From Macrostomum lignano (Eukaryota), in the NCBI GenBank assembly GCA_002269645.1, contig NIVC01000083.1, positions 248,001 through 312,000 of the forward strand: 64,000 nucleotides of DNA, read 5' to 3'. The position numbers and the translations under genes were made by a program. Numbering within the stretch: position 1 is the first letter of the stretch; every line of letters starts with the position of its first letter. A model generated the notes under the pieces. The model searched no databases and was not told where the DNA came from. It was given only the letters and a program-made list of their open reading frames with translations. Below, in pieces: positions 35,557-49,586 of the stretch.

Positions 35557-37902
<2,346 letters not shown>

Positions 37903-38379
37903 TCCTATACTCGGTGTTTTTTTTCAAATTTCTGTTTGACTCTGTGATACTTTTATCTGAATTCGGTTTACCTTTAAAAGTAGAAAGCTTTCACAAGCGT
38001 GCGAGAACACAGTCGCTTGCTTCAATGATAAGAGAAATTCATGTGACAAAACGCACACAGAGAATGGACCGAACCGTTATATTACTGAATTCTAAAGGTC
38101 GCAAATTCCAAGAAAGCACGAGTGCAAAGGTGTAAATACAGTACAGTAAACTCTTTCTTCGTGGCTTAACTACGAGTTGAAAAAGATTATGCACTTAGCA
38201 AACTGATAAAGTACTGAAAAAATCGATGCTATCAATTAAGTAGTCATTTTGCCTATTTAATGAAGTACTTTCATTTCTTTCTGGCATAGGCTGATTTCGC
38301 CAGCACACATCTCTATTTTAATCTTTATTTAAGCTTTTCTCATACTCGTAAAATTACTTTATGAGGATTTTACGAATAC

Positions 38380-39232
38380 CTCTGCCTCCTCCTCTCCCCT
38401 CTCTCCCTCCTCCTCTCCCCTCTCTCCCTCTGCCTCCTCTCCCCTCTCTCCCTCCTCCTCTCCCCTCTCTCCCTCTGCCTCCTCTCCCCTCTCTCCCTCT
38501 GCCTCCTCTCTCTCACTCCTCCTCTCCTCTCTCTCCCTCTGCCTCCTCCTCTCCCCTCTCTCCCTCCTCCTCTCCCCTCTCTCCCTCTGCCTCCTCTCTC
38601 TTCCTCCTCCTCTCCTCTCTCTCCCTCCTCCTCTCCTCTCTCTCCCTCTGCCTCCTCTCCCCTCTCTCCCTCTGCCTCCTCTCCCCTCTCTCCCTCTGCC
38701 TCCTCTCTCTCCCTCCTCCTCTCCTCTCTCTCCCTCTGCCTCCTCCTCTCCCCTCTCTCTCTCCCTCCTCCTCTCTCTCCCTCTGCCTCCTCCTCTCTCT
38801 CCCTCCTCCTCTCCCCTCTCTCCCTCTGCCTCCTCCTCTCCCCCCTCTCTCTCCCTCCTCCTCTCCTCTCTCTCCCTCTGCCTCCTCCTCTCCCCTCTCT
38901 CTCCCTCCTCCTCTCTCTCCCTCTGCCTCCTCCTCTCTCTCCCTCCTCCTCTCCCCTCTCTCCCTCTGCCTCCTCCTCTCCCCCCTCTCTCTCCCTCCTC
39001 CTCTCCTCTCTCTCCCTCTGCCTCCTCCTCTCCCCTCTTTCTCTCCCTCCTCCTCTCTTCTCTCTCCCTCTCCCTCCTCCTCTCCTCTCTCTCCCTCTGC
39101 CTCCTCCTCTCCCCTCTCTCCCTCCTCCTCTCCTCTCTCTCCCTCTCCCTCCTCCTCTCCTCTCTCTCCCTCTGCCTCCTCCTCTCCTCTCTCTCCCTCT
39201 GCCTTCTCCCCTCTCCCTCCCTCCTGCCTCCT
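38380..39232. repeat. Polypyrimidine (CCT/CT) low-complexity array between TMEM41A and the EXD2-like gene
   Basis: Almost entirely C/T on the plus strand. Confidence 0.95.
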
Positions 39233-39835
39233 CGAAAACATTAATCTAAAATATTTACACACACCAATACCTATAACTGGAAGGTTTAAACAAGTACGAG
39301 CTAGTTAAAGTTTATCTGCACTCGAACACACACACACACACACACACAGCAGGACCCCAATACCGCTGAAATTTTATTTAAAAGCAGATGAACCATGCAC
39401 CTTTGAACTTTGAAAGTTTCTCGAAAGGCAGTGTCAATTGAATATTTAGCTAACCATGTGAAGCGTATCAAAATGCATGTACGTTTGCTAACCAGCTCGA
39501 ACAGTTATTCCTAAACACAGTCACATGACTTTAATTTTGTTTGGCATTGAACCAAAATCATTTTTGGCGTTGGTTGCACCTGCCTCATGTGCGACCGTTT
39601 TTGAGGTCAAAACCATTTATCGAATTGTTGGAATATTTCCATATTTTTGTGCCTTCAAGCGATACAATCCACCAAACCGAATCAGTATTTGATAAAAAAT
39701 ACTTTAGAAGAATATTTTGCATAATATGCAAACTTCTTTAACACGTGAAACGAGAATTAAACAGCTGTTCTTGACTAATAAATGCACTGATTCACTGTGC
39801 CATTAAATTTTATTTAATAATTTATACGATTTTTA

Positions 39836-39968
39836 TTAGAAAAATTTTAAATAGTCATCACTGAGTGGGCAGGCATTTTTTTAATTAATGACTCGGCGAG
39901 TTAAAGGTAGGGAGACAGACAGACAGACAGATAGACAGACAGACATACAGACACTAAGACAGACAGAA

Positions 39969-40005
<37 letters not shown>

Positions 40006-40055
40006 TACAGACACTAAGACAGACAGAAAGACAGACAGACAGACAGACAGGCAGG

Positions 40056-40105
<50 letters not shown>

Positions 40106-40137
40106 GGCAGGCAGGCAGACAGACAGACAGACAGACC

Positions 40138-40193
<56 letters not shown>

Positions 40194-40230
40194 GGCAGAC
40201 AGTCAGACATTCAGACAGACAGACTGACAC

Positions 40231-40261
<31 letters not shown>

Positions 40262-40318
40262 GGCAGGCAGGCAGACAGACAGACAGACAGACAGACAGTC
40301 AGACAGACAGACAGACAC

Positions 40319-40353
<35 letters not shown>

Positions 40354-40356
40354 GTC

Positions 40357-40393
<37 letters not shown>

Positions 40394-41060
40394 GGCAGGC
40401 AGGCAGACAGACAGACAGACAGACAGACACAGACAGACAGACAGATAGACAGGCGGGCAGACAGACAGGCAGACAGGCTCACCCCACCCCCCAGTCCCTC
40501 GGCATGAACCTCGGCCGCATGGTGGCCTCAAAGTGGCACCGCCAGAGCCGCTCGAAGTCCGCCAGCGACTCGGCGCCGCGGCGACCCAGCAGAGCGCGGA
40601 CAACCCGAGCACCGTGCCGCACATCCTCCTGACGATCATCCGCACGGCTCCCCGCTGCCGCCGTCAGCCTCTGCAGCTCCGCGGCCCGCTCCGGCGGCAG
40701 CCGCTCACCGTGGCGCTTCAACGCCGCCGCAGCCGAAAGCGCCGCGCCAAACTGGGCGCTGCGCGCCGACTGTCGATTTCCGCGCGGCGCCGAGAACGCC
40801 AGCGCCAGGCAAGACTTCAATCGGTCGTCCCGTTTCTCGCTGTAGTCATGGCAACGCAGACAGAGTCGGACCACGTCGGCTGGTCGATGCTTTTTTAGCT
40901 CTTCCGGGAGGTGCTTCCGGTACTCGGATGGGATGATTTTTTTCTGACGAAGCGGCATCGACTTGGCGCCGCAGACGGCGCAGCGGGGAGCCGACTGGCG
41001 CCAAGAGAAATACAAGACAACCGCCGCAGCCGCCGCAGCCGCAACCGCCAACAGTTTCTT
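39836..41060 (-). CDS. Stand-alone EXD2 C-terminal (HNH-like, CxxC) domain protein with an N-terminal hydrophobic anchor and no exonuclease domain; exons 41060-40483 and probably 39860-39836; no ATG at exon start
   Basis: [22 protein letters not shown] is followed directly by CAVCG...[29 protein letters not shown]...DDRLK..LA..F.AP.G...RHGARVV...[20 protein letters not shown]. This is collinear with the C-terminal half of EXD2 (CVVCG..KNVIPHEYRKHFP..MKDH..DVLLLC..CH, recalled). Acceptor TTCTAG|AAG at 41060; donor GTGAGC at 40482 precedes a (GACA)n intron. Confidence 0.8.
39915..40476. repeat. (GACA)n microsatellite in the putative intron of the EXD2-like gene
   Basis: Read directly. Confidence 0.95.
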
Positions 41061-41224
41061 CTAGAATTTTAAATAATCTGTTATTATTACTATCAATAAA
41101 ATTAAGCTTGGGCCATTTTATATTGTCTAGAAGTTTCACATTAATTCAAGAATCCTATTGTTAAGGCATTGTGATCCCTAATTGCTCAAATTGCGATTCT
41201 AAATCTATGGACTTTTGACCCAAC

Positions 41225-41650
41225 ATCTAGGGACTTTATGATCCAAAATATATAAGCTGGAATGATACCAAATCTATAAGCTGGGATATGATCCCAAATA
41301 TATGGACTGTATGATCCCAAATATATGGACTGTATGATCCCAAATATATGGACTGTATGATCCCAAATCTAGAGACTGTATGATCACAACTATAGAGACT
41401 GTATGATCCCAAATCTATAAGGACTGTATAACCCCAAATCTAGGGACTGTATGACCCCAAATCTATGGGACTGTATGATCCCAAATTCAGAGACTGTATG
41501 ATCACAAATCCAGAGACTGTATGATCCCAAATCCAGAGACTGTATTATCACAAATCTAGAGACTGTATGTTCACAACTATAGAGACTGTATGATCCCAAA
41601 TCTATGGGACTGTATGATCCCATATCTATAGGGACTGTATGACCCCATAT
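41225..41650. repeat. ~23-bp minisatellite (TATGATCCCAAATCTAGAGACTG)n upstream of the EXD2-like exon
   Basis: Tandem units read directly. Confidence 0.9.
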
Positions 41651-42399
41651 CTAAGCTATCAATCAGACTATTTTTAGCCACAAGCGTAAACCAACTATTG
41701 GCAGTAACTGTAGCAAATGCCTCACTAAAGAACCATAAATAATGATTATTTAGTAACAACAGCTTGAGGGATTGTGTAGTATTAAGATCCCTGATTTATG
41801 AACTATTGCCGTTGGGATCTCGGTCTTCTAAGGCCTCACAATTAAGAAGGGAAGACAGGGAGCGGGGGAATGTACGCGCCCACAAAAATCCCTGCCCACC
41901 AAGAGAGGTCCAACAATCGAAGTACTCGAAAAACATAAGGCGCGGATGAATTTGTTGATAAAAATCGATGCCAATAAAGCTGCTTTTCTTTGAAAGAAAA
42001 AACCCTGAGAATGCCCGAAATGTTTCCTTGCTTGCTGGCTGGAGAGGAGCTTAAAATCTAGGGCGGGTGGGAGACGAAGCGAAAAAGGGGAAGTCAGTGA
42101 AGGGATCAGAGAGAAATCGATCAGCTGTAGGAGAACAAAATTCAGAATAAGTGCGGCTTTCGTTACGGCTACAATAAAACGCATGGGCGAGAAAAAATTT
42201 ACTCAACTGAGCACCCTCACTGAGCTGTGACCGCTAAAAGACGGCCTGACTCTCGGGCAGCGATTGTTGAGGGCCTCACAGATTTTCTTCCTGACAAATT
42301 TACTTTCAGAAATCTGTTTGCAGAAAGTGAATTAAGGACAAGGTAGGTGAGCCAGTTTTGACTGCCGTTCATTAACGTAATTGTTGTTAGATTAGATAG

Positions 42400-42990
<591 letters not shown>

Positions 42991-43031
42991 GCCTCCCCTC
43001 ACAGACACCTAGCAGTCAGGCATCATCGCCG

Positions 43032-46000
43032 ATGGACAGGCAACTGTCGGCATCGACGGAGTCGCTGCTCACTAGCCGGTCCCGCAGCCTTTTCGACAAC
43101 CTGGACCGGGACTGCAGCGGCTACATCGAGCCGGCGGACCTCGCCGATTACTGCGGCGCGGAGCTCAGCAAAGAGGAATTCGCCAAGCTGTTCAAAGAGC
43201 TGGACAAGGACGGCGACGGCCGGATAAGTCTGGAGGATTTCCGAGAAGGATTTCGTTTCATTAGTCGAACGGTGCATCGACACGATCAGGTAAGCGAGGA
43301 CGTCATCAAACAGGTTTTACTCGTGCGAAATTGGATTGGCTGTGTTTATCCCTATGAGAAACCGAATCAGCAGTTATCTTGGAGATTTCTTAGAAAGCTA
43401 CCAAATGTTTCTTAGAAAAAGGCGGATTGATTTCCTAGAACTTAAATGGACGCTGCTTTATTGATATAAAGAGGATAGAAGTTTTTTTCCTGGAAAAGGG
43501 CTGATAGTTTCCTAAACAGTTTGAATTGTTTTATTAAAACGGCATTCATTGTTATTCTCTAAGAAATTGAGCCGGTGGTTATTTCTTAAAAACAATGGGA
43601 TTGATTAACAAAAATAAAAAATCTAAAAATTTTTAAATTGTTTTTTTGAGATCAGTCACTTTTTTATTGGAAACGTATAAATGCATTCTTAGAATCAAGT
43701 GATGATCGAACATTTTAGAAACCGGATTGACGTGTTTTTTTAAGTAACAGAATACAGTTTTAATGATGCGCAGCGATTTTTTCTCAGAAAAATTTCGTGA
43801 AAAATTTTCTTGTACTTCTTTCCTAGAAACCCAACGGACTTCTTTCTTAGAAACCCAACGGACTTCTTTCTTAGAAACCCAACGGACTTCTTTCTTAGAA
43901 ACCCAACGGACTTCTTTCTTAGAAACCCAACGGACTTCTTTCTTAGAAACCCAACGGACTTCTTTCTTAGAAACCCAACAAACTTCTTTCTTAGAAACGC
44001 AACGGACTTCTTTCTTAGAAACGCAACGGACTTCTTTCTTAGAAACCCAACGGACTTCTTTCTTAGAAACCCAACGGACTTCTTTCTTAGAAACCCAAGG
44101 GACTTCTTTCTTAGAAACCCAACGGACTTCTTTCTTAGAAACCCAACAAACTTCTTTCTTAGAAACGCAACGGACTTCTTTCTTAGAAACCCAACGGACT
44201 TCTTTCTTAGAAACCCAACAAACTTCTTTCTTAGAAACGCAACGGACTTCTTTCTTAGAAACCCAACGGACTTCTTTCTTAGAAACCCAACGGACTTCTT
44301 TCTTAGAAACCCAACGGACTTCTTTCTTAGAAATCTGAAATACTTCGTTCTTCGAGAAACTCAATCGTTCTACATTCGACAATCCACAGGAGCGCCGTCG
44401 ATCGTCGGTGGCGTCGAGCCTGTCAGCACGCCGACTGCCAACTAGCACTGCCGGCTCCCGAGACGACAACCTCAACCGACTGGACGAATCGGTTGAGGAG
44501 GGCAACGGCAGCCGGGGAGCCGCAGGCGAGGTCAAGGAAGCCACCGGAAGTGCCGACACCCCACAGCAGCAGCTGGCGCAGGCTCTTAACGACTGTCTGC
44601 AATCGTTGTCTACTCAAGACTGCGTCCTGGATCTGTACCAGCAGCTCAGCGAGCAGCAGCAGAGGCAGCCTCATCTGTTAGAGAGCTTCGAGACTGTGCT
44701 CGCCGACCTGATTCAAACCATTCAAAGCCTTCGTTCGGAGCAGACCAAGATGGAGGAGTCAATGAAGCTGGAGCGGCAGCGGCACAGGAGGGCCTTGCGA
44801 GAGATGGAGGCTGAGCTGGAGCAGCAGGTGGGAAATTTTTGAAGTCCCAAAATCTCGATTATGAAATCTCCCAGCAGATCCAAAATATTAGAATCTAAGC
44901 TATTAGAATCCCAACTCAATTAGAATCCCAACTCAATTAGAATCCCAACTCAATTAGAATCCCAACCCAATTAGAATCCCAACTCAGTTAGAATCCCAAC
45001 TCAATTAGAATCCCAACTCAAATAGAATCCCAACTCAATTAGAATCCCAACTCTATTAAAATCCCAACTCAATTAGAATCCCACAATCCCAAATCTCAAA
45101 ACACCCGCTAACCCTGACAGCTGGCGGCAGCTGAGGAGGCCGCCCACACCCGAGCACGCGAATCGGCCGAGCGCGATTTCCGAGCCGTCCTAGAAGCCAA
45201 GGACGCCGAATTGGCATCTTTAGCTCAGCAACTGGCCGAGCATCGGGTCAAACTGACCGCAGCTGATTCTCTTGGATCCGAAATCGCCGCCCTGAAACGG
45301 GAGCTCACCGAGGCCAGGGCTGAGACACAGTTGGCCCAATCGGAGCTAAACGAGTCGGAGACTAGATTGGCGGTTGCTATGAGCGAGATCAGCTCGTTAA
45401 AGCAGTCGCTTCAAGAGCGAGAGTTCAGCGTGGCCAGAGAGCGCGAGACGGTGCAGGAGCAGCTGAGGCAGGGAGCTCGCATTGCTCAGCAGCTGCAGGC
45501 GATGCACGCGGCTAACAGAGCGTTGCGAGACAGGAATGAGGAGCTCCTGCAGGTGAGACTGAAGGGGTTCTCATGCCTTCTCACTGTTTTTCATGGCTTC
45601 TCACTCTTTATTATGTTTTCTCACTTTTTTATTATGCCTTCTCACTTTTTAATTATGGCTTCTCACTGTTTCTCATGGCTTTTAACTTCTTCATTCTGGC
45701 TTCTCACTGTTTCATTGTGGCTTCTCTCGTTTTCTCATGGCTTCTCACTGTTTTTCATGGCTTCTCACTGTTTCACATGCCTTCTTACAGTTTCTCATGG
45801 CTTCTCCCAGGTTCTCATGGCTTCTCACTGTTTCTCATGGCTTCTCTCACTGTTTCTCATGGCTTCTCCCGGGTTCTCATGGCTTCTCACCGTTTCTCAT
45901 GGCTTCTCACTGTTTCTCATGACTTCTCACTGTCTCTCATGGCTTCTCACTGTTTCTCATGGCTTCTCACTGTTTCTAATGGCTTCTCACTGTTTTTCAT

Positions 46001-49000
46001 GGCTTCTAACTTCTTCATTCTGGCTTCTCACTGTTTCATTGTGGCTTCTCTCGTTTTCTCATGGCTTCTCACTGTTTCTCATGGCTTCTCTCACTGTTTC
46101 ACATGCCTTCTTACAGTTTCTCATGGCTTCTCCCGGGTTCTCATGGCTTCTCACTGTTTCACATGGCTTCTCACTGTTTCTCATGACTTCTCCCGGGTTC
46201 TTATAGCTTCTCACTTTTCATTATGGCTTCTCACTTTTCATTATGGCTTCTCACTGTTTCTCATGGCTTTTCACTTTTTCAATATGGCTTTTGAATTTTT
46301 CATTATGGCTTTTCACTGTTTCTCATCATGGCTTCTCAGTTTTTCTCATCATGGCTTCTCAGTGTTTTTTTATGGCTTCTCCCAGTTTCTCATGGCTTCT
46401 CACTGTTTCTCATGGCTTCTCACTTTTCATTTTGGCTTCTTAATTTACTTCTCATGGCTTCTCACCAACTCTTTACAATCATTCGAAATCCAACAGGTCG
46501 CCAAAGCCTCCACATCGTCCTCGTTTGACGCCAACGAAGCCGACCACGGCGAGGAGTCAGACTGCGATGACGCAAACGAACACGATGACGTCATAGTCGA
46601 CGACCGTCGCAACAGACAGAAGCGACTGCAAATTTTTAAAGCGCCATCAACAGCACCGCGAACGGGCTCTTCAAGATTGTCTGGCAATCGCCAAGGTCTC
46701 AAAGTCGGAGGCGGTCATCCGGAACGAATGTTCAAAGTGGTCCTAGCCGGTGACAGCTCGGTTGGGAAGTCCTGCCTCATCATGCGGCTGTGCGATAATA
46801 AATTTGTGGAACGAACCACCGCCACGTTGGGCGTCGATTTCAAAACTACGGTGCTGAATGTTGACGGCGAACTGCTGGCTGTTCAGGTGATAAAATTCTT
46901 CTTATTTATGCGAGATTGGAGATTTTAGCAATTAGCTACTGATACTACTTTTGTAAGTAGCACAACTAGATTGAAATGATAAGCGGTATCAAATGCATGG
47001 TCAGTTTATGTCACAATTTTTTTATAAAATTGTCAAATTTATGTCAAAAATAAAATAAAACTGACTCATACATGATGCCAGTAATGAGAAGAATGAATTC
47101 ATAATTGAGTCAATGCAATCTTGAGGTCATAAAAGCGATTATTAATGAGATCACAAATGGGATTATAAATGAGGTCATTAATGGGATCAGAAATAATTTC
47201 ATAAATGGTGAGTTCGTAAATGGGGCCATAAATTGCATCATAAATGAGATCACAAATGAGGTAATAAATGAATGTCAGAACTCAGAAGTGTGAGGCTATA
47301 AAAATGAATCTCCCATTCCCGGCCGTAACTCGGCAGCTGTGGGACACGGCGGGTCAGGAGCGCTTCCGGTCCATCGCTAAATCCTACTTTCGGCGTGCGG
47401 ACGGCGTGCTGCTGCTCTACGACTGCTCACATGAGCGTTCGTTTCTGAGCGTTCGCGACTGGCTAAGCCAAGTGCGCGAAGCTGCCGACGTGCCGATCAT
47501 GATCTGCGGAAATAAGATCGACCTGCGAGCCGAGGCGGAGCTCAAGCAGCAACAGAGTCAAGACAGTCAGCAGAATCAACGATTTGTTGGCTACACCGAA
47601 GCCAGGAAGCTGGCTCAAGAGCACGACGCCCTGTTCGCGGAGACCAGCGCTAAAAGTGGAGAAAATGTGGCCGAGAGTGTGGCCGAACTGGCCAGACAGA
47701 TGCGAGCTAACGAAGATTTGCAGGTGGGTTGGGGGTGGAATCCTTCACCTGTTGGATAGAATTCTCCAAACCTGTTGGATAGAATCTCCCCAAACCTATT
47801 GGATAGAATCTCCCCAAACCTGTTGGATAGAATTCTCCAAACCTGTTGGATAGAATTCCCCAAACCTGTTAAATAGAATTCCCAAAACTTGTTGGATAGA
47901 ATTCCCCAAACCTGTTGGATAGAATTCCCCAAAACTGTTGGATAGAATTCCCCAAACCTGTTGGATAGAATCTCTCCAAACCTGTTAAATAGAATTCCCA
48001 AAACTTGTTGGATAGAATTCCCCAAACCTGTTGGATAGAATTCCCCAAAACTGTTGGATAGAATTCCCCAAACCTGTTGGATAGAATCTCTCCAAACCTG
48101 TTGGATAGAATTCTCCAAACCTGTTGGATAGAATTCCCCAAACCTGTTGGATAGAATCGCCCAAACCTGTTGGATAGAATTCTCCAAACCTGTTGGATAG
48201 AATTCTCCAAACCTGTTGGATAGAATCGCCCAAACCTGTTGGATAGAATTCTCCAAACCTGTTGGATAGAATCTCCCCAAACCTGTTGGATAGAATCTCC
48301 CCAAACCTGTTGGATAGAATTCTCCAAACCTGTTGGATAGAATCTCCCCAAACCTGTTGGATAGAATTCCCAAAACCTGTTGGATAGAATTCCCAAAACC
48401 TGTTGGATAGAATTCCCCAAACCTGTTGGATAGAATTCCCCAAACCTGTTGGATAGAATTCCCCAAACCTGTTGAATAGAATTCTCCAAACCTGTTGGAT
48501 AGAATTCCCCAAACCTGTTGGATAGAATTCCCCAAACCTGTTGGATAGAATTCTCCAAACCTGTTGGATAGAATCGCCCAAACCTGTTGGATAGAATCTC
48601 CCCAAACCTGTTGGATAGAATTCTCCAAACCTGTTGGATAGAATCGCCCAAACCTGTTGGATAGAATTCCCCAAACCTGTTGGATAGAATTCCCCAAACC
48701 TGTTGGATAGAATTCCCCAAACCTGTTGGATAGAATTCTCCAAACCTGTTGGATAGAATTCTCCAAACCTGTTGGATAGAATCTCCCCAAACCTGTTGGA
48801 TAGAATTCCCCAAACCTGTTGGATAGAATCTCCCCAAACCTGTTGGATAGAATTCTCCAAACCTGTTGGATAGAATCCCCCAAACCTGTTGGATAGAATT
48901 CTCCAAACCTGTTGGATAGAATCTCCCCAAACCTGTTAGATAGAATTCTCCAAACCTGTTGGATAGAATTCCCCAAACCTGTTGGATAGAATCGCCCAAA

Positions 49001-49586
49001 CCTGTTGGATAGAATTCCCCAAACCTGTTGGATAGAATTCCCCAAACCTGTTGGATGGAATTCCCCAAACCTGTTGGATAGAATTCCCAAAACCTGTTGG
49101 ATAGAATTACCCAAACCTGTTGGATAGAATCGCCCAAACCTGTTGGATAGAATCTCGCCAAACCTGTTGGATAGAATCGCCCAAACCTGTTGGATAGAAT
49201 TCCCCAAACCTGTTGGATAGAATCGCCCAAACCTGTTGGATAGAATTCCCCAAACCTGTTGGATAGAATCTCGCCAAACCTGTTGGATAGAATCGCCCAA
49301 ACCTGTTGGATAGAATTCCCCAAACCTGTTGAATCGCCCAAACCTGTTGGATAGAATTCCCCAAACCTATTGGATAGAATTCCCCAAACCTATTGGATAA
49401 GTATAATTGTTAGTAAGATATAAAGTAACAACACTGCATTTTTAAAGTAAATAACTTATTATGATGCAACCTAACAATTAAACCCAGGTGAGCCAGGCAC
49501 ACTCACAATTATCATGGCAGCAGCAGTCAGTACAGCTAAAAGAGGGCAGCCATGGAAGCAGTCGTCCTGCCTGCTGTGAGACCTGA
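43032..49586 (+). CDS. RASEF: RAS and EF-hand domain-containing protein (Rab45); exons 43032-43289, 44390-44827, 45121-45552, 46497-46886, 47337-47723, 49488-49586
   Basis: Two EF hands (DRDCSGYIE, DKDGDGRISLEDF), a coiled-coil middle, a Rab domain (FKVVLAGDSSVGKS, ATLGVDF, LWDTAGQERFRSIAKSYFRRADGVLLLYD, GNKIDL, ETSAK) and a C-terminal CCET prenylation-type motif. All introns are phase 0, GT-AG. Confidence 0.92.
43820..44335. repeat. 24-bp minisatellite (TTTCTTAGAAACCCAACGGACTTC)n in RASEF intron 1
   Basis: Highly homogeneous tandem units. Confidence 0.95.
44905..45085. repeat. 17-bp minisatellite (AATTAGAATCCCAACTC)n in RASEF intron 2
   Basis: Tandem units read directly. Confidence 0.9.
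45560..46465. repeat. 20-bp minisatellite (TCATGGCTTCTCACTGTTTC)n filling RASEF intron 3
   Basis: Tandem units with an internal block duplication. Confidence 0.95.
47745..49398. repeat. 23/24-bp minisatellite (AAACCTGTTGGATAGAATTCCCC)n filling RASEF intron 5
   Basis: Tandem units over ~1.65 kb. Confidence 0.97.

What the first reader, a model, noticed from the sequence alone, without database searches (positions are those of the whole stretch)
39836..41060. Membrane-anchored EXD2 C-terminal domain without the exonuclease: a possible new protein architecture
Seen: within one exon a hydrophobic anchor is joined directly to the CxxC...CxxCH HNH-like region, so the exonuclease domain cannot be hidden in an intron between them. 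The frame is intact for ~190 codons. Established: EXD2 is an N-terminally anchored mitochondrial outer-membrane nuclease with an exonuclease domain followed by an HNH-like domain of unclear function. Inference: an exonuclease-less paralogue that could be a regulator or partner of EXD2, or show an independent role for this domain.
Basis: partly seen in the sequence, partly recalled or inferred. Interest (0 to 1): 0.7.

Follow-up and report, generated by a model that had tools for sequence, protein, structure and literature searches.

The report
Truncated, exonuclease-less EXD2-like flatworm gene
A single-exon gene of the flatworm Macrostomum lignano encodes only a hydrophobic N-terminal helix joined to the zinc-finger/HNH-like tail of the mitochondrial nuclease EXD2; it has no exonuclease domain and a degenerate active site, so it is a real but lineage-restricted variant of a known protein.

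Summary
On the minus strand, 41060..40482 (stop 40479-40481), there is an intact 193-codon frame. A hydrophobic stretch (residues 3-20) runs straight into CxxC...CxxCH. The rest of the stated range (39913-40476) is a (GACA)n microsatellite, probably 3'UTR, ending at poly(A) signals near 39832.

The organism is Macrostomum lignano, and a 99% identical paralogue is annotated as a partial hypothetical protein. Residues 24-192 match the EXD2 C-terminal module (E 5e-40 against an EXD2 profile; E 1e-21 to starfish EXD2). No exonuclease-coding piece exists anywhere in the 64 kb. The flanking genes are an EF-hand/Rab gene transcribed divergently and TMEM41A.

Beyond the exonuclease, the protein also lacks about 75 residues of the module's own N-terminal sub-domain. 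Its catalytic positions are degenerate (HH→KK, SHD→PAD). It still keeps 30 of 33 family-invariant positions and gives a confident model (pLDDT 87.5).

There is no genomic ATG. The frame opens at a TTCTAG acceptor, and the M. lignano spliced leader ends in ATG in frame, which would give MKKLLAV…

Exonuclease-less homologues already exist in phages and giant viruses, but none of the closest 149 relatives has the anchor fused directly to the core.

Not determined: a separate full-length EXD2 in this genome, dN/dS, and localisation.

The parts
41061..41066 (-). TTCTAG: 3' splice-acceptor-like site immediately upstream of the frame. Its TAG is also the in-frame stop that opens the ORF. A second AG, 3 nt downstream (41058-41059), is also in frame. 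This is the proposed spliced-leader acceptor.
   Evidence: Sequence. The M. lignano trans-splice acceptor motif is [T/C]TNCAG and the SL ends in ...TTGCATG (PMC8629364). Two independent ab initio models (P0017, P0018) start or join an exon exactly at 41060. The site is identical in the paralogous locus L001. No SL reads were examined.
40479..41060 (-). Coding exon: 193 codons plus TGA, with no genomic ATG before the conserved domain. It encodes the EXD2-like protein.
   Evidence: It is 100% identical to P0001 and 99% to PAA91656.1 (M. lignano hypothetical protein BOX15_Mlig017757g1, partial). GC3 > GC1 > GC2, as in the neighbouring genes.
41001..41054 (-). Hydrophobic, Ala/Val/Leu-rich segment [18 protein letters not shown] (residues 3-20), flanked by KK and R..R. 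Putative signal-anchor or targeting helix, encoded largely by a GCN-rich run.
   Evidence: Kyte-Doolittle 19-residue mean is 1.8, against 1.9-2.15 for two EXD2 anchors. A naive Hessa sum is +2.4 kcal/mol, so the segment is borderline. AF2 predicts a helix at residues 2-22 with pLDDT 61-78.
40797..40982 (-). HNH-like beta-beta-alpha zinc-finger core: C27-x2-C30, strand 37-41 ending in K40 K41 (the HH position), A61 D62 (the SHD position), strand 63-67, C67-x2-C70-H71, helix 68-88.
   Evidence: Alignments, conservation count, AF2 secondary structure. The best PDB matches are the Cap5 HNH nuclease, but they are not significant.
40482..40796 (-). C-terminal helical region of the EXD2 module, including the A..AA.AL..HG..LPPER..EL, HG.RVV and [16 protein letters not shown] motifs. 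The last motif runs to within 3 residues of the stop.
   Evidence: (helices 96-120, 123-141, 149-161, 163-181; pLDDT mostly above 90).
39809..40476 (-). Probable 3'UTR: a (TGTC)n/(GACA)n microsatellite (39913-40476), then two AATAAA signals (39832-39837 and 39809-39814).
   Evidence: The same microsatellite follows the ORF in the paralogous locus L001. The poly(A) site itself was not verified.

Best explanation
This is a small, separate, transcribed gene of Macrostomum lignano, derived from the EXD2 family. It has lost the DEDDy exonuclease domain and the first third of the EXD2 C-terminal module. What remains is an N-terminal hydrophobic helix fused directly to the Cys4 zinc-finger HNH-like core and its helical tail.

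Shown:
- single uninterrupted exon;
- homology of residues 24-192 to the EXD2 module;
- no exonuclease-coding sequence in 64 kb;
- separate flanking genes;
- the fold-determining residues are retained.

Inferred:
(1) The mRNA is SL trans-spliced at the TTCTAG (or the adjacent AAG) acceptor. The ATG that ends the M. lignano spliced leader supplies the start codon in frame, giving M-K-K-L-L-A-V... This would explain why the databases call the protein 5'-partial.
(2) The basic / hydrophobic / aromatic-basic N-terminus acts like the EXD2 signal-anchor and tethers the protein to a membrane, most likely the mitochondrial outer membrane, with the module facing the cytosol.
(3) The module is not an HNH nuclease. 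The general-base position at the end of strand 1 is Lys (already Lys-Asn in most animal EXD2 proteins), and the invariant His of SHD is Ala. The four Cys and H71 are kept. It most likely acts as a zinc-stabilised nucleic-acid-binding or protein-binding module.
(4) It arose from an ancestral EXD2 either by an internal deletion that kept the anchor or by a 5'-truncated copy that gained a GCN-repeat-encoded N-terminus.
For: - Identity and organism.
- Homology: E 4.7e-40 against the EXD2 profile, ORF residues 24-192; Patiria, Nematostella, Helobdella and primate EXD2 at 39-42% identity, E 1e-21 to 1e-18; the model matches giant-virus EXD2-like proteins, E 1e-6 to 2e-7.
- No exonuclease or N-sub-domain piece in the window.
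- Flanking genes: the upstream neighbour is a divergent EF-hand/Rab gene starting at 43032, and the 2-kb spacer is mostly tandem repeats. TMEM41A downstream has its own ATG exon at 37902.
- Constraint: 30 of 33 columns that are at least 90% conserved in 37 relatives are kept, against 22% identity elsewhere. A chance open frame occurs in under 1% of shuffles.
- Structure: AF2 pLDDT 87.5, with a beta-beta-alpha core plus a helical bundle.
- Expression (indirect): the GenBank annotation of this assembly is built from RNA-seq transcripts that are cut at mapped SL sites (PMC5730564), and the annotated CDS begins 6 nt from the acceptor.
- Spliced leader: the SL ends in ATG (PMC8629364), and flatworm SL AUGs can serve as initiators (Cheng 2006, cited in PMC12582326). 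Both candidate acceptors are in frame.
- Anchor: hydrophobicity and flanking charges resemble EXD2 anchors. The EXD2 anchor is a signal-anchor of the outer mitochondrial membrane (PMC6648332).
- Active-site state.
Against: - No SL-containing read, transcript or protein evidence was seen directly.
- The annotated CDS starts at Leu 3 (41054), not exactly at either AG.
- TAG is a less favoured acceptor than the CAG consensus.
- The hydrophobic segment is poly-Ala-rich and only borderline as a transmembrane helix (naive Hessa sum positive; pLDDT 61-78). It could equally be a signal peptide, a mitochondrial presequence, or a by-product of a GCN repeat.
- No orthologue with this architecture was found in 1.84 billion representatives. 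The gene is therefore known from only two near-identical copies in one neopolyploid genome, and selection on it cannot be measured.
- Losing the N-sub-domain and three otherwise invariant residues could destabilise the protein. High AF2 confidence does not prove that it folds.
- NJ tree and HMM comparisons did not resolve its origin.
Confidence: 0.5

Rival explanations
1. A transcribed but non-functional relic: a 5'-truncated remnant or partial duplicate of EXD2, without its own start codon, sitting between microsatellites. Its frame is still open only because it died recently.
For: - There is no genomic ATG, and it is annotated as 'partial'.
- The N-sub-domain and three invariant residues, including the His of SHD, are lost.
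- Composition is Ala/Arg-rich and GC is 67%.
- A microsatellite starts 3 nt after the stop.
- No orthologue was found.
- The only difference between the two copies is non-synonymous.
Against: - 30 of 33 invariant positions are retained against 22% background identity, with no frameshift or stop over 193 codons in either copy.
- The conserved C-terminal motif runs right up to the stop codon.
- The ORF opens exactly at an acceptor that would be in frame with the SL ATG.
- Its closest relative, P0019, shares the degenerate active site yet is also an intact ORF in another eukaryote. This suggests an older, maintained, inactive sub-type.
Confidence: 0.27
2. The exon is cis-spliced to a short, non-conserved upstream exon in the 41061-43030 spacer that supplies an ordinary ATG, and perhaps a few more residues. 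The architecture would be the same, but the start codon would not come from the spliced leader.
For: The frame opens at a canonical acceptor. About 60-70% of M. lignano genes are not trans-spliced.
Against: The transcript-based GenBank model has no upstream exon and is 5'-partial. The spacer is largely a 23-bp minisatellite plus TAGA/CAGA microsatellites. The only upstream join that any model proposes (P0018) uses the antisense strand of the EF-hand exon and is clearly artefactual.
Confidence: 0.12
3. The ORF is the 5' exon of a fusion gene with TMEM41A, as in the UniProt model A0A1I8IIV5 (P0017, 404 aa). That model uses a donor at about 40512 and joins to exons at 37291, 36723 and 35763.
For: Both genes are on the same strand and are adjacent. 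A database model with this structure exists.
Against: - The model skips TMEM41A's own first exon, which has an ATG and a transmembrane segment at 37902.
- It cuts off the family-conserved FMP..W motif, which continues to the ORF's own stop.
- The transcript-based GenBank annotation keeps the two genes separate (191 aa and 284 aa) in the paralogous locus.
- A sister model, P0018, contains frameshifted and antisense pieces, which shows that this annotation set is unreliable here.
Confidence: 0.05
4. It is the last exon of a canonical full-length EXD2 whose exonuclease exons lie outside the window.
For: In some invertebrates the whole C-terminal module lies in one large terminal exon (P0014, and P0019 in L007).
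Against: - The hydrophobic segment, not the N-sub-domain, precedes the CxxC in the same exon.
- No exonuclease piece lies within 23 kb upstream.
- A divergently transcribed gene occupies the upstream flank in both paralogous loci.
Confidence: 0.03

Closest known systems
[quoted passage not shown]
   Same: - C-terminal module from the CxxC to the end: 39-42% identity, with all four Cys, H71, the IP.EYRKH.P motif, the HG.(K/R)VV motif and the WR.HF..M.P.F.P..W motif.
- Lys at the first position of the HH dyad, as in animal EXD2 (consensus R-K-N).
- An N-terminal segment that is basic, then Ala/Val/Leu-rich, then aromatic-basic, resembling the EXD2 signal-anchor.
   Different: - No DEDDy exonuclease domain (PF01612) and no linker.
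- Lacks the first ~75 residues of the C-terminal module.
- SHD→PAD, K.N→S.P before the CxxC, and a ~20-residue shorter inter-helix linker.
- 194 aa rather than 550-650 aa, in a single exon.
Stand-alone EXD2-C-like HNH proteins of phage-like contigs and giant viruses (P0003-P0013, ~250-290 aa; Harvfovirus A0A3G5A5A7, 247 aa)
   Same: They have no exonuclease domain and the same core plus helical tail: 31-38% identity, E 1e-17 to 1e-22, and TMq 0.65 to the Harvfovirus model.
   Different: The viral forms keep the N-sub-domain, an intact R-H-H dyad and SHD. They give marginal Pfam HNH (PF01844) matches, have no hydrophobic N-terminus, and sit in dense phage-like gene arrays near RNA ligase genes.
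P0019: 229-aa ORF on a genomic contig of an unidentified eukaryote (Logan ERR12944162, L007)
   Same: It is the closest non-Macrostomum relative (43% identity, E 4e-23) and the sister in the NJ tree. It also has a degenerate dyad (R-I) and KRD instead of SHD, and no in-frame ATG ahead of the domain.
   Different: It has no hydrophobic N-terminus and keeps a vestige of the last N-sub-domain strand (VVQFTFPAEE). It is probably a terminal exon whose upstream exons are not on the 1.6-kb contig, so its full architecture is unknown.
HNH / His-Me finger nucleases with a Cys4 zinc site (Pfam PF01844; e.g. the HNH domain of the CBASS effector Cap5)
   Same: A predicted beta-beta-alpha core flanked by CxxC...CxxC, with a His in the helix.
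   Different: The general-base His is absent. The ORF gives no Pfam HNH match. The structural matches are not significant (E about 1, 71-81 aligned columns).

Membership tests
EXD2 (canonical architecture) | DEDDy 3'-5' exonuclease domain (Pfam PF01612) | tested here: not met
   Pfam finds nothing on the ORF. The EXD2 profile and tblastn find no exonuclease-coding piece on either strand of the 64-kb window.
EXD2 (canonical architecture) | C-terminal HNH-like core (CxxC...CxxCH) followed by a helical region ending in WRQHF..M.P.F.P..W | tested here: met
   E 4.7e-40 against the EXD2 profile, ORF residues 24-192. 30 of 33 invariant columns are kept. Alignment.
EXD2 (canonical architecture) | N-terminal sub-domain of the C-terminal module (PLYxN..APDG..LC..KKAxWY..VRLxFEPSGR) | tested here: not met
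   It is absent from the ORF and from the window. The hydrophobic stretch takes its place.
EXD2 (canonical architecture) | N-terminal single transmembrane signal-anchor (mitochondrial outer membrane) | tested here: inconclusive
   A hydrophobic helix is present (KD 1.8; AF2 helix 2-22), with flanking basic residues as in EXD2. It is Ala-rich and borderline by a naive Hessa sum, and no dedicated TM or targeting predictor was available. Localisation cannot be tested here.
Catalytically competent HNH endonuclease (His-Me finger) | General-base His at the end of strand 1 (the HH dyad) | tested here: not met
   The dyad is K40 K41. Viral stand-alone homologues have HH, and most animal EXD2 proteins have KN.
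Catalytically competent HNH endonuclease (His-Me finger) | Beta-beta-alpha-metal fold with a helix His, and a structural Cys4 zinc site | tested here: inconclusive
   AF2 gives strand 37-41, strand 63-67 and helix 68-88. C27, C30, C67, C70 and H71 are all kept. The best PDB matches are the Cap5 HNH domain, but at E about 1. Model coordinates could not be inspected.
Catalytically competent HNH endonuclease (His-Me finger) | Match to a curated HNH profile | tested here: not met
   The ORF has no HNH-clan hit even at E of 10 or less. Viral homologues reach PF01844 at E 2e-4 to 6e-4.
Flatworm mRNA whose start codon is donated by the spliced leader | ORF opens at a 3' acceptor, has no in-frame genomic ATG ahead of the conserved domain, and joins the SL-terminal ATG in frame | tested here: met
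   TTCTAG|AAG AAA CTG. The first genomic Met is residue 35, after the first CxxC. The SL is ...TTGCATG.
Flatworm mRNA whose start codon is donated by the spliced leader | RNA reads carrying the SL joined at this site | not testable with these tools
   No read data are accessible. The only indirect support is that the GenBank models derive from RNA-seq with SL-site cutting and that the annotated CDS starts 6 nt from the acceptor.

The most novel reading that the evidence does not exclude
The short protein is not an extra paralogue but the only EXD2-family gene left in M. lignano, and perhaps, together with P0019, a member of an older catalytically dead sub-family. In that case a membrane anchor plus the non-catalytic zinc-finger/helical module would be a selectable functional unit of EXD2 that does not depend on any exonuclease activity: a natural separation-of-function allele in a transgenic, RNAi-amenable animal.
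Probability: 0.15. Interest if true: 0.55.

Novelty: new variant of a known kind. Interest (0 to 1): 0.35.

Why it matters
The role of the EXD2 C-terminal 'HNH-like' domain is unknown, and there is no Pfam model for it. This locus shows that an animal genome can keep that module, minus its N-terminal sub-domain and with a dead active site, on its own behind a hydrophobic N-terminus. The module also circulates as a stand-alone, apparently active HNH protein in phages and giant viruses, next to RNA ligase genes. Together these points argue that the module works independently of the exonuclease. M. lignano, which supports RNAi and transgenesis, would be a system for testing that. The locus is also a useful annotation case: a protein labelled '5'-partial' may be complete once the ATG of the spliced leader is counted, and two UniProt models for this locus are chimeras. 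The significance is limited, because the gene is known from a single species and its expression, localisation and selection are unverified.

Tried and rejected
- Pfam and PDB sequence searches of the ORF returned only noise.
- dN/dS between the two M. lignano copies is not informative. They differ at 1 of 582 nt (D72Y), and the unique upstream sequence is identical.
- The search for a full-length M. lignano EXD2 was inconclusive. The profile search scored only the 8000 most word-similar candidates and listed the best 120, all from other animals. The names of 20 top representatives included no flatworm. No paper links EXD2 to flatworms, and the gene ID is not in the literature.
- Origin, animal EXD2 versus viral stand-alone clade, was not resolved. 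HMM scores were 134.5 versus 130.6 bits, and the NJ bootstrap was unresolved, partly because the 'short' hits include exon-level fragments of animal EXD2.
- The PDB fold search gave no significant match. The Cap5 HNH domain ranked top at E about 1.
- Fusion with TMEM41A (P0017) and the 588-aa model P0018 were rejected as merged or frameshifted predictions.
- Upstream exon search: the minus-strand ORFs in 41061-43030 are repeat translations with no family match.
- The prokaryote-style promoter/terminator scan is irrelevant for a eukaryotic locus and was at background level.
Full report
**What is there.** The feature is on the minus strand. A 193-codon frame runs from 41060 to 40482 and ends in TGA at 40479-40481. 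It reads [79 protein letters not shown]... and finishes with ...[25 protein letters not shown]. 39913-40476 is a (GACA)n microsatellite of 141 copies that begins 3 nt after the stop. Two minus-strand AATAAA signals lie at 39832-39837 and 39809-39814. An open frame of this length appears in only 0.7-0.9% of composition-matched shuffles. The codon-position GC pattern (GC3 > GC1 > GC2) matches that of the neighbouring genes.

**Organism and existing annotation.** The protein is identical to one database cluster representative. It is 99% identical to PAA91656.1, 'hypothetical protein BOX15_Mlig017757g1, partial', of Macrostomum lignano. That paralogous locus (L001, NIVC01000082.1) is syntenic with the window at about 95% identity. 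Within the ORF the two copies differ at a single nucleotide (D72Y), and the roughly 230 bp of unique upstream sequence is identical. dN/dS is therefore uninformative. The GenBank annotation of this assembly was built from RNA-seq transcripts, cut at mapped spliced-leader and poly(A) sites, with ORFs called by TransDecoder (PMC5730564). This is indirect evidence that the locus is transcribed.

**Homology.**
- A profile of ten full-length EXD2 proteins, searched against all 2299 six-frame stop-to-stop pieces of the window, hits only this ORF. The E-value is 4.7e-40, with profile positions 362-545 aligned to ORF residues 24-192. Nothing matches the exonuclease or linker parts; the best other E-value is about 3. 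tblastn with individual EXD2 proteins agrees.
- phmmer against 1.84 billion representatives gives 1172 hits at E of 1e-3 or better. After the M. lignano entries, the best named hits are EXD2 of Patiria (42% identity, E 1e-21, residues 349-539), Nematostella, Helobdella and primates. There are also full-length homologues in lamprey, a barnacle and volvocine algae.
- Pfam has no model for this module, so the ORF gives no Pfam hit.

**What is missing or changed.** Alignment with animal EXD2 and with stand-alone relatives shows that the canonical module begins about 75 residues before the CxxC. That stretch is a conserved sub-domain (PLYxN..APDG..LC..D.KKAxWY......VRLxFEPSGR....YY...K.N.C). The M. 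lignano protein lacks all of it except possibly the YY position (Y17). In its place is the hydrophobic stretch.

Of the 33 columns that are at least 90% conserved across 37 relatives, the ORF keeps 30. Identity at the other 140 aligned columns is 22%. The three losses are:
- K23S and N25P, both at the truncation junction;
- H61A, the His of SHD, which is invariant in the 37 relatives.

The dyad at the end of strand 1 is KK. It is HH in 43 of the 56 short forms in which the motif was found, which are mostly viral, and KN in most long EXD2 proteins. Two other long proteins also have KK. The general-base His is thus already absent in most animal EXD2 proteins, and the flatworm protein is one step more degenerate. 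The four Cys, D62 and H71 are all retained.

**Structure.** AlphaFold2 with a 38-sequence alignment gives mean pLDDT 87.5 and pTM 0.68. The elements are a helix at 2-22 (pLDDT 61-78), strands at 37-41 and 63-67, a helix at 68-88 (together a beta-beta-alpha core), and then four further helices with pLDDT mostly above 90. Foldseek against the PDB finds nothing significant; the top matches are the HNH nuclease domain of CBASS Cap5 (E about 1, probability 0.63). Against predicted viral structures the model matches a Yasminevirus 659-aa exonuclease-domain protein (E 2e-7) and a 247-aa Harvfovirus protein named EXD2 (E 1e-6, TMq 0.65).

**Gene structure and start codon.** The frame opens immediately after TTCTAG (41066-41061). 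The TAG in this hexamer is both the in-frame stop and a YAG acceptor. A second AG lies 3 nt further in. There is no in-frame genomic ATG until residue 35, which is after the first CxxC. The M. lignano spliced leader is CGGTCTCTTACTGCGAAGACTCAATTTATTGCATG, the trans-splice acceptor motif is [T/C]TNCAG, and about 30-39% of genes are trans-spliced (PMC8629364; PMC5730564). Flatworm SLs end in an AUG that can serve as the initiator (Cheng et al. 2006, as cited in PMC12582326). Joining the SL at either AG gives ATG|AAG AAA CTG or ATG|AAA CTG, both in frame. The product would be M-K-(K)-L-L-A-V-A-A..., a classical basic-then-hydrophobic N-terminus.

This would explain why all database versions are '5'-partial'. 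It would also explain why two ab initio models place an exon boundary exactly at 41060. It remains an inference, because I saw no reads. The GenBank CDS starts at Leu 3 (41054), a few nucleotides off either AG, which I cannot explain beyond trimming or coordinate effects.

**Neighbours and rival gene models.**
- Upstream in gene orientation, the next gene is a divergently transcribed EF-hand/Rab gene. It starts at 43032 on the plus strand.
- The 2-kb spacer consists mostly of a 23-bp minisatellite plus TAGA/CAGA microsatellites.
- Downstream on the same strand is a TMEM41A/VTT-domain gene. Its own first exon ([20 protein letters not shown]...) starts at 37902.
- UniProt A0A1I8IIV5 (404 aa) fuses the ORF to TMEM41A through a donor at about 40512. 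It skips TMEM41A's own first exon and cuts off the conserved FMP..W motif.
- UniProt A0A1I8IQ19 (588 aa) strings together an antisense EF-hand exon, frameshifted pieces of this ORF, TMEM41A and unrelated sequence.
- I regard both UniProt models as artefacts. The transcript-based GenBank annotation keeps the genes separate.

**The hydrophobic segment.[18 protein letters not shown] has a 19-residue Kyte-Doolittle mean of 1.8. This is above the usual 1.6 threshold and close to the EXD2 anchors of two animals (1.9-2.15). A naive Hessa sum is +2.4 kcal/mol, against 0.0-1.0 for those anchors. Its layout (basic N-terminus, Ala/Val/Leu core, aromatic residues, then Arg) resembles EXD2 N-termini such as that of Tubulanus (LALAALVAAAAAGTFGFWF...RRK). 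That fits retention of the ancestral signal-anchor after an internal deletion. However, it is encoded by a GCN-rich run, and it could equally be a signal peptide, a presequence or a repeat by-product. None of the 149 closest representatives has a hydrophobic N-terminus directly before the CxxC.

**Relatives without an exonuclease.** Proteins of about 250-290 aa that consist of the full module only (P0003-P0013) lie in dense, unidirectional, phage-like gene arrays. These arrays carry sigma-70, ClpX-like, PARP and LAGLIDADG genes, and in all three contigs examined an RNA ligase (PF09414 and/or Rnl1) lies nearby. These proteins keep R-H-H and SHD and reach Pfam HNH at E 2e-4 to 6e-4. Absence of the exonuclease is therefore not new for this module. 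What is new is an animal copy with an anchor and a truncated, inactive core.

The closest non-Macrostomum relative is P0019 (43% identity), from a genomic contig of an unidentified eukaryote. It shares the degenerate dyad (RI) and has KRD in place of SHD, but its upstream exons are not on the contig.

**Interpretation.** The most likely reading (about 0.5) is a functional, SL-trans-spliced, single-exon gene. Its product would be a membrane-tethered, non-catalytic, zinc-stabilised EXD2-type module. The main rival (about 0.27) is a transcribed relic. Against that rival stand the strong enrichment of retained invariant residues, the intact frame in both copies, the conserved motif running to the stop codon, and the in-frame acceptor. 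In its favour are the lack of any orthologue, the lost sub-domain and invariant His, and the absence of direct expression data. A cis-spliced small 5' exon (0.12), the TMEM41A fusion (0.05) and a canonical EXD2 with distant exons (0.03) are less likely.

**Not determined.** I could not establish whether M. lignano also has a full-length EXD2. A tree and HMM comparison did not resolve whether the gene descends from animal EXD2 or from a viral stand-alone form. The Lys at the dyad, and the slightly higher identity to animal proteins, favour an animal origin.

**Verdict.** This is a lineage-restricted new variant of a known family, of moderate-to-low general interest. It would be useful to anyone studying the unexplained C-terminal domain of EXD2.

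Noticed in passing
L002 54-920; L003 8001-8816; L005 8001-8828 (metagenome contigs): Stand-alone ~270-aa homologues of the EXD2 C-terminal module have an intact R-H-H dyad. They sit in phage-like gene arrays and have an RNA ligase gene (PF09414, and in L005 also Rnl1 PF09511) nearby in all three contigs examined. In L002 the ligase overlaps the 3' end of the gene. This hints at an RNA repair or processing role for the ancestral module.
   Followed up: partly
BFVD hits to model m2ab192c1038b: Giant viruses (Klosneuvirinae) encode both a full-length EXD2-like protein (Yasminevirus, 659 aa) and a module-only one (Harvfovirus, 247 aa; Catovirus, 183 aa).
   Followed up: no
window 35560-41060 and 43038-43229, minus strand: UniProt A0A1I8IIV5 ('Transmembrane protein 41A', 404 aa) and A0A1I8IQ19 ('SNARE associated Golgi protein', 588 aa) are chimeric gene models. 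They merge the EXD2-like ORF, partly frameshifted, with TMEM41A exons. The second also includes the antisense strand of an EF-hand exon.
   Followed up: yes
L007 112-810 (Logan ERR12944162): The closest non-Macrostomum relative (P0019, 43% identity) also has a degenerate active site (RI dyad, KRD for SHD) and no in-frame ATG. It follows a tatacag acceptor at 82-88. The organism and the upstream exons are unknown.
   Followed up: partly
window 38386-39233, 39913-40476, 41201-41653, 42388-42990: The gene sits in a GC-rich island (67% GC) surrounded by tandem repeats: a CT-rich array of 27/52/140-bp periods, (GACA)n, a 23-bp minisatellite, and (TAGA)n followed by (CAGA)n. The same arrays, with different copy numbers, flank the paralogous locus L001.
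   Followed up: partly
window 43032-47760 (+), with repeats at 43760-44340, 45570-46470 and 47615-49400: There is an EF-hand plus Rab-type GTPase gene here (CRACR2A/Rab44-like by Pfam in the paralogous locus). It is interrupted by, or followed by, long coding-looking tandem repeats, which produce ORFs of up to 561 aa on both strands.
   Followed up: no
alignment A2: In most animal EXD2 proteins the position of the HNH general-base dyad is K-N, not H-H. The 'HNH-like' domain of animal EXD2 is therefore probably not an active HNH nuclease in general. There is no Pfam family for this module.
   Followed up: partly
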